Part shown: one piece after another, positions 9,469 through 34,577 of the stretch
Layout of the letters: every line of letters begins with the position of its first letter
Position numbering within the stretch: the first letter of the stretch is position 1
Virus record (IMG/VR): IMGVR_UViG_3300042391_000634
Coordinates: 124,001 to 188,000 of that record
Reading direction: 5' to 3' (one strand)
Length of the DNA stretch: 64,000 bases
The notes under the pieces: model-generated
What the model saw: only the letters and a program-made list of their open reading frames with translations
Told to the model about the DNA's origin: nothing
Database searches by the model: none
Program-made: the position numbers and the translations under genes

Positions 9469-10170
9469 TTATTCTAAAAATCCACCCAAAATACCGTCAT
9501 ATAGTTTCTTATAACGTTTAAGAGAGACTCTAATCTCTTTTGTTGATAAGGAGGTCATTTCTCGTAAAGAGAGTAAGATAAGGTTCTTATTGAATTTGTT
9601 ACCATCACCTACTTGAAATATCTTATCAAAATTACTGAAGATTTCAAGTAATGCGTAACCTAACTTTCTCTCGTTATCAGATAGATTTTTTTCTTTTTCA
9701 ATAAAATTTTCTAAATCAATTGTAAGTTTAGTGATAACAGAACTATAATCAATTACGAATTCATCCGTAACATATGAATGGTCTTTACTATCCTCAAAGT
9801 CGGAAGATATATCATCATAAGAAACCTGTCTATTCTGTTCTTTGGTATCTTTCTGTATTGCTCCCATAAGGTAGTTTTTACAGATGGTTCCAAAATATGA
9901 ATACGCTTTAGTATTCTTTGTGTGGTCAAATTTGTTAATCTTAGTTATAAGAAAAGACATTGTATCGGTATGAATTTCTTCAAATTCCATATCTTTTCTA
10001 TAAAGTTTATAACGTCGAATAATTGATTCAACCATTATAATTAGGGGTTCACGTAAATATTCATTGAATATCTTATTTCTTTCTGTTTCGTCACTACTTT
10101 CTAAGTAATTGACTACCGCCTTCTCTTGATCCTCCCCAAAATATATTTTTTGGGTTCTTGGTCTTGGCAT
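9469..10170 (-). CDS. gp55: Phage sigma factor, gp55-like (late transcription)
   Basis: Sigma region-2 pattern LIIMVESIIRRY...EEIHTDTMSFLITKINKFDHTKNTKAYSYFGTICKNYL, comparable to the gp55 F-D-x-x-K...A-Y-F-T-x-I motif; no clear region-4 HTH. Confidence 0.7.
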   Translation of the reverse strand: MPRPRTQKIYFGEDQEKAVVNYLESSDETERNKIFNEYLREPLIIMVESIIRRYKLYRKDMEFEEIHTDTMSFLITKINKFDHTKNTKAYSYFGTICKNYLMGAIQKDTKEQNRQVSYDDISSDFEDSKDHSYVTDEFVIDYSSVITKLTIDLENFIEKEKNLSDNERKLGYALLEIFSNFDKIFQVGDGNKFNKNLILLSLREMTSLSTKEIRVSLKRYKKLYDGILGGFLE

Positions 10171-30869: not shown

Positions 30870-33767
30870 ATGGCAAGTAATAACAGAGTTTTCGTGTCTC
30901 CAGGTGTCTATACATCCGAGCTCGATTTAACATTTGTAGCACAGAGTGTAGGTGTTACCACATTAGGTTTATCAGGTGAGACTTTAAAAGGTCCAGCTTT
31001 TGAACCAATTTTAATTTCTAGTTTTGACGATTTTAAATTGTATTTTGGTAGTACATCACCAGAAAAAGATGGTAACGGTAATCCTAAATATGAATTAGGA
31101 TATGTTGCAAAATCATATTTACAAGAATCAAATCAATTATTCGTAACAAGAGTATTAGGTCTTACAGGATATAAACCATATAAAACATTCGGTATTAAAA
31201 CTATCGGAGGTGTTATATTACAAGAATATCAAACTATAACAGAATGGACAGGTACATCTGGATTAACACCGACAACAGTTGGTATTGATGATATATCTTT
31301 AATTTATAATCATTTGTCGAATAAACCGGCACATGATGGTACTATGATTACTGATTATATTGTTAAAAATTACAGTGGATTAACAAATGCAGATAATGGT
31401 AAGTGGTTTGTAATGGGAGCAATTCCATCTGAAGAAATATCATTACTACCAAGTTCAACTTTAGAACTTGAGTCTCCATTAACAGGAAAAGTTAATAGTG
31501 ATAATAATAATACTAAAGAATGGACTAATGTATTATTCAATTTAGCAACACCGAGTGATCACACAACTGTAGATGGTGTTTATTCATATTTATTTGAATG
31601 GAAAAGTGGTACAACTAAATTTGATGTAACAAGATTTAATTGGGATGCTGAATTGGCTGTAGATTATGATAACATAATTGTTGCCGCTTTTAGACCTAGA
31701 GGTCGTTACAGTGGACAAACATTAATTCATGAGGTTACAACAAATACGGGTTTCACTTTAACTGAGATTGATGATATGGAACATAATCCATTAGGAGAAT
31801 TTACAATAAATGTTGTAGGTCATACAGAAGGTGCAAAAGAATTTACATGTACATTTGACACCACTTCATCAAAATATATTACTAAAGTTTTAGGAGTTGA
31901 TGTTTTCGATAAAGATTATCGTGATTACCCCATTTATATTCATGAATCATATCCAAATTTTTTAAAGTCAGGATTTGAAAGAGGTTTAATTAGAGGTATT
32001 TCTATGGATGTTTCTTACGAGACAGAGGGAAATAATTTCTTACAACAATGGGACACAACAATTTCTCCAATGGTAGTTTCTGAAGTTCGTGGTGGTAGTG
32101 TTGCTGATTTATTCCAAGTTATTACAATTTCAGATGGTGAGGCCGCTAACTTTGAAGTAAAAATTAATATTCAAAACATTAATTTAGATACTATGGAGTT
32201 TGATTTAGTAGTTCGTGATTTTAATGATACTGATGACAATCAAGTTGCTTTAGAGAAATATACAAGATGTTCAATGAATCCAGATGTTCCAGGTTATATA
32301 GCTAAGAAAATAGGTACATCTGATGGTGAATATGCATTGGTTTCAAAAAGAATCATGTTAATGATGGCAGACGGAGCACCTGTGGATGCAATTCCAGCTG
32401 GATTTAAAGGTTTTGCTAACAATGAACAATTTGGGGCAGATAACGATACATTTGGTAGTATTATATATAAAACAAAATATAATGACGCTGGCGATGTTGT
32501 AACATATGATACAACAGGAGCACCTAATATTGAGGGTGGAGATAAAGTGAGAAAGGTTATTTTAGGATTATCAAGTACAGTTGGTTTTGACCGAGATTTG
32601 TTAAAATATAAAGGTGTAAATGCGTCAACTGAAACATTCGGTTTCCATTTATCCGTAAATGCGGCAACAATTACAGGTACAACTTTTCATACTACCGAAT
32701 ATGATTTAGAAGGACAAACTAATGAAGAAACAAATAAATTAACAAATATCAACTATCGTAAATTTGCTTTTGCAGTATATGGTGGTAGAGATGGTTGGGA
32801 CATTTATAGAAATGTTAGGACTAACGACGATCGTTATATTTTTGGTAAAACAACTTATAAGTCAGAAGTTTTACTTACAGGTGTGTTTAATCCAACTATC
32901 GGTAATTCTGACTATTATGCTTATTTACAAGGTATTGAAACATATTCAAACCCTGAAGCTGTTGATATTAACGTATTTGCAACCCCTGGTATTAACTTTT
33001 ACGACCATAGTTCTTTAGTTAATCAAGCAATTGACATGATTGAAACAGATAGAGCGGATTCTTTATATGTTATGAATTCACCAAATATCACAGGTCCTTC
33101 TGCAACGGAAGATATTGTAAATGCTTTAGACAGTGCTTCAATTGACTCTAACTACTCAGCAACATATTGGCCTTGGATTCAAGTAAGAGATGTAGATAAT
33201 GCAACTCAATTATATATCCCACCAACAGGTGAGGTATTGAAAAATATCGCCTTAACTGATAATGTATCATATCCTTGGTTCGCAGTTGCGGGTTACAGTA
33301 GAGGTTTGGTTAACGCAGTCAAAGCAACCAAAAAATTAACTTTAGACGATAGAGACGTATTATATAAGAATAGAATTAACCCAATTGCAACATTCTCTGA
33401 TACAGGAACCATTATTTGGGGTAACAAAACGTTACAAGTTAGAGAATCTGCACTTGATAGAATCAACGTAAGAAGATTGTTATTAAGAGCAAGAAAGTTA
33501 ATTTCAGCTGTTTCTGTAAGATTATTGTTTGAACAAAACGATGACCAGGTAAGAAACGAATTCTTAAGATTGGTAAATCCTATCTTGGATGCAATTAAGA
33601 AAGAAAGAGGTTTGTATGACTTCCGTGTAACAGTATCTAACGATCCTGAGGATATCGACGCAAACACAATGAGAGGTAAGATTTACATCAAACCAACTCG
33701 TTCTCTTGAATACATCGATGTAGAATTCATTATTACTCCAACAGGAGCTTCATTTGAAAATATCTAA
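30870..33767 (+). CDS. gp18: Tail sheath protein (gp18 family)
   Basis: N-terminal FVSPGVYTSELDLT; C-terminal YWPWIQ...PPTG...WFAVAGYSRG...LYKNRINPI...WGNKTLQ...DRINVRRLL...IKPTRSLEYI. Confidence 0.97.
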   Translation: MASNNRVFVSPGVYTSELDLTFVAQSVGVTTLGLSGETLKGPAFEPILISSFDDFKLYFGSTSPEKDGNGNPKYELGYVAKSYLQESNQLFVTRVLGLTGYKPYKTFGIKTIGGVILQEYQTITEWTGTSGLTPTTVGIDDISLIYNHLSNKPAHDGTMITDYIVKNYSGLTNADNGKWFVMGAIPSEEISLLPSSTLELESPLTGKVNSDNNNTKEWTNVLFNLATPSDHTTVDGVYSYLFEWKSGTTKFDVTRFNWDAELAVDYDNIIVAAFRPRGRYSGQTLIHEVTTNTGFTLTEIDDMEHNPLGEFTINVVGHTEGAKEFTCTFDTTSSKYITKVLGVDVFDKDYRDYPIYIHESYPNFLKSGFERGLIRGISMDVSYETEGNNFLQQWDTTISPMVVSEVRGGSVADLFQVITISDGEAANFEVKINIQNINLDTMEFDLVVRDFNDTDDNQVALEKYTRCSMNPDVPGYIAKKIGTSDGEYALVSKRIMLMMADGAPVDAIPAGFKGFANNEQFGADNDTFGSIIYKTKYNDAGDVVTYDTTGAPNIEGGDKVRKVILGLSSTVGFDRDLLKYKGVNASTETFGFHLSVNAATITGTTFHTTEYDLEGQTNEETNKLTNINYRKFAFAVYGGRDGWDIYRNVRTNDDRYIFGKTTYKSEVLLTGVFNPTIGNSDYYAYLQGIETYSNPEAVDINVFATPGINFYDHSSLVNQAIDMIETDRADSLYVMNSPNITGPSATEDIVNALDSASIDSNYSATYWPWIQVRDVDNATQLYIPPTGEVLKNIALTDNVSYPWFAVAGYSRGLVNAVKATKKLTLDDRDVLYKNRINPIATFSDTGTIIWGNKTLQVRESALDRINVRRLLLRARKLISAVSVRLLFEQNDDQVRNEFLRLVNPILDAIKKERGLYDFRVTVSNDPEDIDANTMRGKIYIKPTRSLEYIDVEFIITPTGASFENI

Positions 33768-33791
33768 TATAAAAGGAGATATAAAAAGAAG

Positions 33792-33820
33792 AAGGATATC
33801 AGAAATGGTATCCTTTTTTT
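33792..33820 (+). terminator. Intrinsic terminator after the sheath gene
   Basis: AAGGATATCA-GAAA-TGGTATCCTT followed by a T run. Confidence 0.85.
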
Positions 33821-33821
33821 G

Positions 33822-33837
33822 TGCTCCACGTGGAACC
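33822..33837. promoter_or_regulatory. parS-like palindrome TGCTCCACGTGGAACC
   Basis: 14/16 identity to the parS sequence TGTTCCACGTGGAACA with a perfect TCCACGTGGA core; intergenic. Confidence 0.6.
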
Positions 33838-33877
33838 ATATTATATAATAATTATATCTTTATAAGATACCCAGAAT

Positions 33878-33951
33878 ACTGGAACTAGATATACTAGTAT
33901 TTATTATTAATATTAATTTATTTAAGTAGAATGTTAAACTGGAACTAGATA
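33878..33951 (+). repeat. 14-bp direct repeat ACTGGAACTAGATA, 2 copies 60 bp apart, flanking an almost pure A/T tract
   Basis: Copies at 33878-33891 and 33938-33951. Confidence 0.85.
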
Positions 33952-34088
33952 CTGGGGCCTGTAAAAAACTACGAAAAATAATTGACATAAACAACCTTTT
34001 TCATATAATTAATCTAAAATAAAATTATTTTCCTTTTGGATATATTTATAAGAAAGTAAATAACTAAAAAAATTTAACAACACACAAT

Positions 34089-34577
34089 ATGGCCGATTTA
34101 TTAATGAAAATGCCGACACCTTACGAACCAAAAAGGACAAACCGATTTATTGTAAGATTTAACTCATCTTTGGGTATAAACGAATGGTATGTATCCTCAG
34201 CCGCAAGACCAAGTGCAAAAATAAAATCTGTAGAGATTCCTTTTTTAAACACTAAAACATATGTTGCTGGTCAATTTGAATGGAACGAAATTAAAGTAAA
34301 GTTCAGAGATCCAATCGGACCTTCAGCAGCTCAAGCTTTAATGGAATGGTTCCGTTTACATGCTGAATCTGTAACAGGTCGTATGGGATATGCTGCTGGT
34401 TATAAAAAAGATGTAGAATTGGAGATGTTAGACCCAACAGGAGTTGTGGTTGAGAAATGGTTATTAGAAGGTTGTTTCTTAACTGATTTAAACTTTGGTG
34501 AATTGGACTACTCAAGAGATGATTTAGCCATGATTGATTGTTCATTAAGAATGGACAGATGTATATTAATCTATTAA
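34089..34577 (+). CDS. gp19: Tail tube protein (gp19 family)
   Basis: EPKRTNRFIV, ARPSAKIKSVEIPFLN, YVAGQFEWNEI, LDPTGVVVEKWLLEG, ELDYS, LRMDRC; follows the sheath gene. Confidence 0.92.
   Translation: MADLLMKMPTPYEPKRTNRFIVRFNSSLGINEWYVSSAARPSAKIKSVEIPFLNTKTYVAGQFEWNEIKVKFRDPIGPSAAQALMEWFRLHAESVTGRMGYAAGYKKDVELEMLDPTGVVVEKWLLEGCFLTDLNFGELDYSRDDLAMIDCSLRMDRCILIY

What the first reader, a model, noticed from the sequence alone, without database searches (positions are those of the whole stretch)
33822..33837. parS-like centromere site in a T4-like phage
Seen: TGCTCCACGTGGAACC matches TGTTCCACGTGGAACA at 14/16 with a perfect 10-bp palindromic core. It is GC-rich in an AT-rich genome and lies in the largest intergenic gap, right after the sheath terminator. 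My rough estimate for a two-mismatch hit anywhere in 64 kb is about 0.02 at uniform composition. Known: chromosomal ParB-CTP loads at this 16-bp consensus across many bacteria and recruits ParA/SMC. No parA or parB gene is in this window. Inference: the phage may borrow host ParABS/SMC to position or segregate its genome (pseudolysogeny or a carrier state), or titrate ParB to disturb host segregation.
Basis: partly seen in the sequence, partly recalled or inferred. Interest (0 to 1): 0.8.

Follow-up and report, generated by a model that had tools for sequence, protein, structure and literature searches.

The report
Host-type parS site in jumbo phage
A 16-base palindrome just after the tail-sheath gene of an uncultured 336-kb T4-like phage is a conserved copy of the bacterial chromosome "centromere" (parS), so this lytic-type phage family probably recruits a ParB protein, most likely its host's, to its own DNA.

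Summary
TGCTCCACGTGGAACC lies at 33822-33837, one base after the T-run of the sheath terminator, in the largest non-coding gap of the window (321 bp). A match with two or fewer mismatches is expected 0.01 times by chance.

It is not a chance match. The box sits at the same place in 47 of 56 distinct sheath-tube spacers of related phages and in 31 of 60 more distant ones. Around it the terminator stem is replaced outright and the downstream spacer diverges. Many relatives carry the perfect palindrome TGTTCCACGTGGAACA, which is Pseudomonas aeruginosa parS2/3. In five Bacteroidota genomes the same sequence forms clusters beside ybeY, and in the two checked also beside mnmG/gidA.

I found no parA or parB in the window, or in the 169 kb (50%) of the 335.6-kb source contig that I could read. 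That stretch holds only this one site.

The best reading is a functional loading site for a chromosomal-type ParB, probably the host's. The host is probably Bacteroidota, since only 2 of 54 genes have a Shine-Dalgarno motif. What the phage gains is inference only: positioning, SMC loading or insulation at the terminator.

The exact palindrome is also at least 10-fold enriched across public viral contigs. No binding was tested.

The parts
30870..33767 (+). Tail sheath gene (965 aa), the gene immediately upstream of the site
   Evidence: Pfam Phage_sheath_1 and Phage_sheath_1C; ORF list
33787..33820 (+). Intrinsic terminator of the sheath gene: a hairpin ending in a 7-T run
   Evidence: RNA fold of 33780-33870 gives -21.4 kcal/mol, z -3.4. 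In relatives the stem sequence covaries or is wholly replaced while the hairpin and T-run are kept
33822..33837 (.). parS-like 16-bp box TGCTCCACGTGGAACC, the finding. Proposed nucleation and loading site for a chromosomal-type ParB dimer
   Evidence: presence and chance. (conserved at the same place; logo T-G-Y-T-C-C-A-C-G-T-G-G-A-A-C-N). (identity with experimentally bound parS variants). (the same palindrome clustered at ybeY-mnmG in Bacteroidota)
33844..33864 (.). Conserved inverted repeat TATAA-N11-TTATA, 6 nt after the box. It is lost together with the box in relatives that lack the box. Role unknown
   Evidence: Nearly invariant columns in A1 and A2. Absent in L061, L066, L067, L069 and L073, which also lack the box
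33870..33956 (.). CTAG-containing repeat region: CCAGAATACTGG, and the direct repeat ACTGGAACTAGATA twice (33878-33891 and 33938-33951) around a 46-bp AT-rich stretch. These look like protein-binding sites of unknown function. They persist in relatives without the box, so they form a separate module
   Evidence: CTAG occurs 41 times against about 181 expected in the window, yet 3 copies lie here. No convincing RNA structure
33982..34009 (+). Perfect sigma-70 consensus TTGACA-16-TATAAT preceded by an invariant A-rich block (GTAAAAAACTACGAAAAA). The -35 part is conserved; the -10 part less so
   Evidence: 12/12 match; conservation
34042..34051 (+). Invariant ATATTTATAA, 46 nt before the tube start codon. 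The same TATTTATA motif lies 12-47 nt upstream of several other genes. Probable phage promoter of the tube gene
34089..34577 (+). Tail tube gene (gp19-like, 162 aa), immediately downstream of the spacer
   Evidence: Pfam Phage_T4_gp19, below its cut-off. tblastn to annotated tail tube proteins

Best explanation
The box is a functional chromosomal-type parS: a 16-bp palindrome at which a ParB dimer binds through its helix-turn-helix domain and, with CTP, closes into a sliding clamp that spreads onto flanking phage DNA. No parB or parA was found in the window or in half of the phage genome, and the box has the sequence that Bacteroidota and many other bacteria use in their origin-proximal parS clusters. 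The ParB is therefore most likely the host's. One site per genome marks each phage chromosome as a ParB partition complex. That complex could be engaged by host ParA and/or SMC to spread, condense or individualise replicating 336-kb genomes, or to keep a genome in dividing cells during delayed infection. Its fixed place right behind (or, in one lineage, inside) a strong late terminator fits a loading site that must be shielded from transcribing RNA polymerase. A bound ParB could in turn act as a roadblock that reinforces termination. What is shown: the sequence, its conservation, its identity with proven parS variants, the lack of parAB in 169 kb, and the terminator association. What is inferred: ParB binding, the host origin of that ParB, and every downstream effect.
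For: (1) Chance expectation is 0.01 per window. (2) The box sits at the same position in 47 of 56 distinct spacers and in 31 of 60 distinct more distant relatives, 241-338 nt before the tube ATG. It forms a conservation island (about 1.3-2.0 bits per column) between a terminator stem that covaries or is replaced (0.2-1.3 bits) and a poorly conserved spacer. (3) Family variants match known ParB-bound sites. TGTTCCACGTGGAACA is P. aeruginosa parS2/3...AACC is parS1/4...AACG is M. xanthus, and CACGAG and CACATG cores occur in weaker P. aeruginosa sites; all ten P. aeruginosa sites are bound by ParB in vitro. Positions 5 and 12 switch between C/G and T/A, which is the degenerate 'N' of the general consensus. 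(4) The exact palindrome, with TGTTCCACGTGAAACA and TGTTTCACGTGGAACA variants, forms clusters of 2-5 sites next to ybeY in five Bacteroidota genomes, and next to mnmG/gidA in the two where that gene was checked. (5) In L054-type relatives the box is absent upstream of the tube gene but reappears inside the terminator hairpin downstream of it. The motif, not its neighbours, is what is retained. A same-composition palindrome with swapped half-sites gives 12 in the whole collection. This suits a factor shared by nearly all bacteria. (7) There is no ParBc, ParA or SMC Pfam hit in 169 kb of the source contig, and no second site there. (8) A chromosomal parS plus parAB stabilises an unstable plasmid, so a parS can confer partition on a foreign replicon.
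Against: No binding data exist. The host is unknown, and Bacteroidota is inferred only from 2 of 54 genes having SD-like motifs and from distant relatives. Half of the genome (about 167 kb) was not read, so a phage parB or parA cannot be excluded. The window's own site carries two deviations (C3, C16), and such sites bind more weakly in P. aeruginosa. About half of the more distant relatives, and the cultured Flavobacterium phage immuto, have no site, so any benefit is dispensable. There is a single site rather than a cluster, and no known origin is nearby. The phage encodes DNA methyltransferases and might modify its DNA in ways that affect binding. The tight coupling to terminators, and the co-loss with the TATAA-N11-TTATA repeat, could instead point to a transcriptional role.
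Confidence: 0.55

Rival explanations
1. The box is bound by a phage-encoded ParB-family protein (a partition ParB, or a KorB/Noc-like clamp used as a regulator) whose gene lies in the unread half of the genome. The phage would then carry its own parS-ParB pair and would not be borrowing the host's.
For: Only 50% of the 335.6-kb contig was read. Many of its proteins have no Pfam hit. ParB-fold proteins are common in phages (my own knowledge). The sequence evidence for a ParB-type binder fits this reading equally well. Presence or absence of the box among relatives could track presence or absence of such a gene.
Against: No ParBc or ParA hit in 169 kb, including replication and nucleotide-metabolism genes (gp32, RecA, DnaB, RNR, primase). 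Plasmid and phage partition systems normally place parS next to parAB and use private sequences that avoid cross-talk with the host. Here the site is exactly the host-chromosome type.
Confidence: 0.15
2. The box is an operator or roadblock site for an unrelated phage or host transcription factor, which controls termination after the sheath gene or a promoter formed with the conserved TATAA 6 nt downstream. Its likeness to parS would be coincidence.
For: The box always abuts a terminator, or sits inside one in L054. If TATAAT at 33844 is a -10 element, the box spans about -34 to -19. The box and the TATAA-N11-TTATA repeat are lost together. The phage encodes its own sigma factors and a NusG homologue.
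Against: Only about 25 of the 65,536 possible 16-bp palindromes lie within one half-site change of parS, so a coincidental match is unlikely, and the family's variants mirror natural parS variation. The same 16-mer recurs in unrelated phages of every GC content and in bacterial origin regions. A private regulator would not explain that. The relocated L054 box has no TATAA repeat beside it.
Confidence: 0.17
3. The palindrome acts as a nucleic-acid hairpin, in RNA or in extruded DNA, that belongs to the terminator or to 3'-end stabilisation of the sheath and tube mRNAs.
For: It is a palindrome beside a terminator. In L054-type phages it forms the tip of the tube terminator hairpin. A few symmetric double changes keep pairing: T5/A12 in TGTTTCACGAGAAACA and T6/A11 in TGTTCTACGTAGAACA.
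Against: In the window clade (18 of 47 boxes) position 3 is C opposite an invariant A14, and positions 1/16 do not pair, which leaves a 3-4-bp stem. The would-be loop (ACGT) is among the better conserved parts. In most phages the box lies after the U-tract, so it is outside the terminated RNA. RNAalifold finds no supported structure and Rfam finds nothing. A hairpin role does not explain the identity with parS.
Confidence: 0.08
4. The match is a non-functional relic or chance sequence carried along by recent common descent.
For: It is a single site. It is absent from many relatives and degenerate in some, for example TGTTTTATGTTGAATA in L080.
Against: It is retained in lineages whose sheath C-terminal region (tblastn with an out-of-frame query, an approximate measure) is only about 50% identical and whose terminator and flanks are unalignable. 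It forms a conservation island and has been relocated independently with the motif retained. Chance expectation is 0.01.
Confidence: 0.05

Closest known systems
Chromosomal parS of the ParABS system (general consensus TGTTNCACGTGAAACA; the TGTTCCACGTGGAACA variant of Pseudomonas aeruginosa/putida, Myxococcus xanthus and, as seen here, Bacteroidota)
   Same: It is the same 16-bp palindrome. Relatives carry the exact P. aeruginosa parS2/3 sequence, and the variants match natural weaker sites. It is intergenic and conserved.
   Different: It sits on a T4-like jumbo phage, not a chromosome. There is a single copy rather than an origin-proximal cluster. No parAB was seen on the same replicon in the 50% read. 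It lies behind a late-gene terminator, not near an origin.
Partition sites of plasmid-prophages (P1, N15, mycobacteriophage and cyanophage Mic1 parABS)
   Same: These are phage genomes that carry a centromere-like site for ParB-mediated partition. Mic1 has parA, parB and a palindrome.
   Different: Those phages encode their own ParA and ParB and use private parS sequences placed beside the par genes, and they are temperate. Here the sequence is the host-chromosome type, no par genes were found, and the gene content is that of a T4-like phage. P1 and N15 details are from my own knowledge.
Hijacking of a resident ParABS by a mobile element (SGI1 using the IncC plasmid parABS; PMC10954446, seen)
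   Same: In both cases a mobile element would gain stability or positioning by carrying only the cis site and using another replicon's ParAB.
   Different: SGI1 exploits a helper plasmid's system. Here the presumed target is the host chromosome's own ParB, and the element is a phage. I read only the title and abstract of that paper.
Plasmid stabilisation by chromosomal parS (P. aeruginosa parS2 with parAB, cited in PMC4368675; B. subtilis Spo0J/Soj, my own knowledge)
   Same: These show that one chromosomal parS is enough to make a foreign replicon a substrate of host ParAB.
   Different: They are laboratory constructs, not a natural phage feature.

Membership tests
Chromosomal-type parS (ParABS centromere) | 16-bp palindrome matching TGTTNCACGTGAAACA or its TGTTCCACGTGGAACA variant | tested here: met
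   The window site has 2 mismatches to the variant and 3 to the general consensus. Relatives have 0-2.
Chromosomal-type parS (ParABS centromere) | Sequence maintained by selection (conserved against diverging flanks) | tested here: met
   47 of 56 and 31 of 60 distinct relatives keep it. It is a conservation island, and it has been relocated with the motif retained. No formal rate test was done.
Chromosomal-type parS (ParABS centromere) | Specific binding by a ParB dimer, with CTP-dependent clamp loading and spreading | not testable with these tools
   This needs EMSA/BLI and a ParB-CTP loading assay, or ChIP-seq.
Chromosomal-type parS (ParABS centromere) | Cognate parA and parB genes on the same replicon | tested here: inconclusive
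   None in the window or in record 67,695-236,427 of the 335,630-bp contig, judged by precomputed Pfam lists. The other 50% was not read.
Chromosomal-type parS (ParABS centromere) | Several sites clustered near the replication origin | tested here: not met
   There is one site with two or fewer mismatches and an intact CACGTG core in 169 kb. No origin was identified. This is a typical feature, not a strictly defining one: a single site suffices in P. aeruginosa (title of PMC4368675).
Chromosomal-type parS (ParABS centromere) | Confers ParAB-dependent partition or stability on the DNA that carries it | not testable with these tools
   This needs a plasmid-stabilisation assay in parB+ and parB-null hosts.
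Intrinsic terminator (the box as part of the hairpin) | Base-paired GC-rich stem directly followed by a U-run, with pairing kept by covariation | tested here: not met
   In the window and most relatives the box lies after the T-run. C3/A14 and T1/C16 do not pair. Only in L054-type phages is it inside a terminator hairpin.
Known structured RNA family (Rfam) | A match to a covariance model | tested here: not met
   No hit at E<=1 in 33600-34200. The RNAalifold consensus is weak.

The most novel reading that the evidence does not exclude
A large family of uncultured T4-like jumbo phages (200-336 kb, probably infecting Bacteroidota) carries no partition genes of its own. It keeps a single host-chromosome-type parS directly behind a strong late terminator, so that host ParB-CTP clamps assemble on every phage genome. 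This would be one case of a wider, undescribed habit: many unrelated phages carry the exact host parS, often right after the terminator of their major structural gene, to co-opt host ParABS/SMC for genome positioning, condensation or carrier-state inheritance.
Probability: 0.35. Interest if true: 0.8.

Novelty: new variant of a known kind. Interest (0 to 1): 0.62.

Why it matters
ParABS is regarded as a system of chromosomes, plasmids and plasmid-prophages that bring their own ParB. A virulent-type jumbo phage that keeps only the host's centromere sequence would mean that phages can plug into the host's chromosome-segregation and SMC-loading machinery with 16 bases of DNA. That would bear on how very large phage genomes are organised in the cell, on pseudolysogeny and carrier states in nature, and on host prediction, because the parS variant could report the host lineage. 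The enrichment of at least 10-fold for the exact palindrome across public viral contigs suggests the phenomenon is general. It is directly testable with purified ParB and short oligonucleotides.

Tried and rejected
- **DNA similarity to GenBank phages:** blastn returned only a 49-bp stretch of Cronobacter phage GAP32, so there is no close cultured relative. By protein, the nearest are Microcystis phage Mel-JY01, Flavobacterium phage immuto and Rhodothermus RM378, at 33-43% identity.
- **Complete immuto genome (160 kb):** it has no parS-like site with two or fewer mismatches, no annotated ParB, and a sheath-tube gap of only 45 nt. The site is therefore not a trait of the wider clade.
- **RNA readings:** Rfam found nothing. 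RNAalifold over the box-to-33969 segment gave a weak consensus (-6.3 kcal/mol, 2 covarying pairs), so I rejected an sRNA or leader structure.
- **Walking the source contig:** all 12 look-ups found no ParA, ParB or SMC in 169 kb. They could not reach the remaining 167 kb.
- **Host inference from ESM Atlas:** phage NusG and bS21 hit only viral clusters, which was uninformative.
- **tRNAs:** none in the window.
- **Half-parS heptamers:** 22 against about 10 expected from base composition. I did not pursue this because codon usage could explain it.
- **Near-matches at record 226,990-231,558:** these lie inside two very large genes and lack the CACGTG core. I judged them to be coding repeats.
- **Box as a promoter element:** I considered a -35 element for an ECF-like sigma (GGAAC) or a T4 MotA box (TGCTT). 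I rejected both on spacing and because relatives read TGTTCC.
- **Literature:** five searches found no report of host-type parS in virulent phages. The absence applies only to this library.

Full report
**The observation.** The 16-mer TGCTCCACGTGGAACC is at 33822-33837. It differs from the palindrome TGTTCCACGTGGAACA at positions 3 and 16 and contains the perfect 10-bp palindrome TCCACGTGGA. It is the only site in the window with two or fewer mismatches, and dinucleotide-preserving shuffles give 0.01 such sites per window. The site is 62.5% GC in a window of about 31% GC. The sheath gene (30870-33767; Pfam sheath domains) ends in a hairpin plus T-run at 33787-33820. The box starts one base later. 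The tube gene starts at 34089. The 321-bp gap is the longest between the ORFs I took as genes. No window protein hits a ParA or ParB family.

**The phage.** The window is bases 124,001-188,000 of a 335,630-bp JGI metagenome contig (3300042391, Ga0453978_0000001). It encodes T4-type capsid, portal, terminase, sheath, tube and baseplate proteins, a family-B DNA polymerase, gp32, RecA/UvsX-like and DnaB-like proteins, and ribonucleotide reductase. No cultured phage is close. The nearest by protein are Microcystis phage Mel-JY01, Flavobacterium phage immuto and Rhodothermus phage RM378, at 33-43% identity. Only 2 of 54 genes have a Shine-Dalgarno-like motif. From established knowledge, this is typical of Bacteroidota and their phages. 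Together with about 30% GC it makes a Bacteroidota host likely, but this is inference.

**Conservation in relatives.** The tube protein retrieved more than 600 relatives from IMG/VR, some on contigs of 200-310 kb.
- In an alignment of 56 distinct sheath-tube spacers, 47 carry the box at the same spot, just after the terminator T-run.
- The terminator stem covaries or is replaced entirely, for example GGGTATC.., GGGAGGC.. and GGGGAGGGGA... The 5-8 bases after the box are poorly conserved.
- The box itself is a conservation island. Its logo is T-G-Y-T-C-C-A-C-G-T-G-G-A-A-C-N, with G2, T4, A7, A13 and A14 invariant or nearly so (46-47 of 47).
- Many of the more distant members carry the perfect palindrome.
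- In a second sample of 60 distinct, more distant relatives, 31 have a box 241-338 nt upstream of the tube ATG. The other 29 have none within 3 kb.
- In one lineage (L054, L057, L058, L064, L065) the upstream box is gone. TGTTCCACGTGAAA(C/T)G instead sits 40 nt downstream of the tube gene, as the tip of that gene's terminator hairpin.

The motif is therefore what is kept, and it stays associated with a terminator.

**Identity with parS.** TGTTCCACGTGGAACA is P. aeruginosa parS2/parS3. TGTTCCACGTGGAACC is parS1/parS4. Sites with CACGAG or CACATG cores are weaker natural sites, and ParB binds all ten in vitro (PMC4368675). M. xanthus uses TGTTCCACGTGGAACG, and the general consensus is TGTTNCACGTGAAACA (PMC7022226). 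The phage family shows the same variants, including C/T at position 5 and G/A at position 12, which correspond to the degenerate position of the consensus. Only about 25 of the 65,536 possible 16-bp palindromes lie within one half-site change of parS, so a conserved palindrome landing there by coincidence is improbable.

**The same sequence in bacterial genomes.** Of the 80 listed, 16 are Bacteroidota. In Algibacter, Chitinophaga (5 copies in 8 kb), Flavobacterium soli, a Flavobacteriales MAG and a Chitinophagaceae MAG, the palindrome lies next to ybeY. The TGTTCCACGTGAAACA or TGTTTCACGTGGAACA variants accompany it in some of these genomes. In Algibacter and Chitinophaga, the two checked, it also flanks mnmG/gidA, the classical origin-proximal gene. 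The box is thus the sequence that likely hosts use as their chromosomal centromere.

**Search for phage par genes.** Using all 12 contig look-ups I read record positions 67,695-236,427, which is 168.7 kb or 50% of the genome. The precomputed Pfam lists show no ParBc, ParA/CbiA-type ATPase or SMC. The only parS-like site with two or fewer mismatches and an intact core is the finding itself. The other half is unread, so a phage parB is not excluded.

**Other readings.**
- Rfam finds nothing in 33600-34200.
- As a hairpin the window box pairs poorly. C3 lies opposite an invariant A14 in 18 of 47 boxes, and positions 1 and 16 do not pair. The would-be loop is conserved, and the box lies beyond the U-tract. 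RNAalifold gives no supported structure.
- A transcriptional operator remains possible. The box would span about -34 to -19 of a TATAAT at 33844. A conserved TATAA-N11-TTATA repeat follows and is lost together with the box. This reading does not explain why the sequence is exactly parS.

**A wider pattern.** The exact palindrome occurs in at least 120 IMG/VR contigs, with the scan stopped at its limit. Their GC content ranges from 23% to 71%, and only two belong to this family. A control palindrome with the same half-sites swapped (GTGGAACATGTTCCAC) occurs in 12 contigs in the whole collection.
- Of 114 sites away from contig ends, 35 are not inside any open frame of 100 codons or more. Seventeen sit next to a hairpin plus T-run, against 0 of 12 for the control.
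- In unrelated siphovirus-like contigs the site directly follows the terminator of the major head protein (L132) or lies one gene further on (L120). In L114 it directly follows a 306-aa virion structural protein.
- Three contigs pair it with a canonical TGTTTCACGTGAAACA 8 nt away.

**Mechanism.** I commit to ParB loading at this site, most likely by host ParB (confidence 0.55). ParB nucleates on the box, closes as a CTP clamp and spreads onto neighbouring phage DNA, giving each phage genome a partition complex. That complex could engage host ParA and/or SMC. The placement behind the strongest late terminators is explained if the loading site must be kept clear of RNA polymerase in a genome that is otherwise transcribed end to end. 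A bound ParB could in turn act as a roadblock. All of this beyond the sequence evidence is inference.

**Caveats.**
- The window site carries two deviations from the palindrome.
- The site is absent from many relatives and from the cultured Flavobacterium phage immuto.
- The phage encodes DNA methyltransferases, so DNA modification could affect binding.
- The host is unknown.

**Novelty.** Five literature searches found partition sites only in plasmid-prophages with their own ParAB, for example cyanophage Mic1, and hijacking of a plasmid's parABS by SGI1. None reports a host-chromosome-type parS in a virulent-type phage. I class the finding as a new variant of a known kind. Interest is 0.62.

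Noticed in passing
window 33870-33956: CTAG is strongly avoided in the window (41 copies against about 181 expected), yet three copies lie in conserved repeats here. These are CCAGAATACTGG and the direct repeat ACTGGAACTAGATA twice, 60 bp apart, around an AT-rich stretch. Distant relatives have many more TCTAGT repeats. The arrangement looks iteron-like (origin or regulator sites). It persists in relatives that lack the parS box.
   Followed up: partly
window 33960-34009: A perfect sigma-70 consensus, TTGACA-16-TATAAT, lies in front of a late structural gene. It is preceded by an almost invariant block, GTAAAAAACTACGAAAAA. The -35 half is conserved across relatives; the -10 half is not.
   Followed up: partly
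window 34042-34051; also 3976(-), 13679(-), 19360(-), 20988(+), 21879(+), 26817(-), 35560s, 37480s, 60330s: The motif TATTTATA (ATATTTATAA before the tube gene, invariant in 56 relatives) lies 12-47 nt upstream of many genes. It is probably the phage's own promoter element, and it is the reverse complement of the T4 late box TATAAATA.
   Followed up: partly
whole window (54 genes): Only 2 of 54 genes have GGAG, GAGG or AGGA in the -20 to -5 region. This near-absence of Shine-Dalgarno sites points to a Bacteroidota-like host.
   Followed up: partly
L054 4525-4560 (also L057, L058, L064, L065): In this lineage the parS-like box has moved from the sheath-tube spacer into the apical part of the terminator hairpin downstream of the tube gene (-19.2 kcal/mol, z -4.1).
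   Followed up: yes
L013 3316-3732: One relative has a 138-aa ORF with an HNH-like 'LDHIVP' motif and no Pfam hit. It is inserted exactly between the sheath terminator and the box and has overwritten the first two bases of the box. It may be a homing-endonuclease insertion.
   Followed up: partly
IMG/VR loci L081-L200 (for example L120 6483, L132 8770, L114 2493, L082 288, L084 5343, L136 310): The exact parS palindrome is at least 10 times commoner in viral contigs than a swapped-half-site control. In several unrelated phages it sits 0-3 nt after the T-run of the terminator of a major structural gene. Three contigs pair it with a canonical TGTTTCACGTGAAACA.
   Followed up: partly
L290 4745/6736, L296 2542-6181, L266 6699/6848, L252 7068/7105, L234 797/1468: In Bacteroidota genomes the parS palindromes cluster beside ybeY (all five) and mnmG/gidA (the two checked), not beside parAB. 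This could serve as an origin marker for that phylum.
   Followed up: partly
source contig outside the window: L225 6117-6926, 12633-12827, 15585-16109; L203 7185-7376; L218 4627-6639; window 9469-10170(-): The phage encodes a sigma-70 family protein with regions 2 and 4 (269 aa) and a second weak sigma-like protein in the window. It also encodes a NusG homologue, an Hc1 histone-like protein, ribosomal protein bS21, a ClpB-like ATPase, a Clp protease, and Dam and N6/N4 DNA methyltransferases.
   Followed up: no
L227, record 226,990-231,558 of the source contig: Several 16-mers resembling half of the box (for example TGGGTCAAGTGGAACA and AGTTTCAGGTGGAACA) recur inside two very large genes (893 and 1631 aa). 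They are probably a repeated coding motif, not parS.
   Followed up: no
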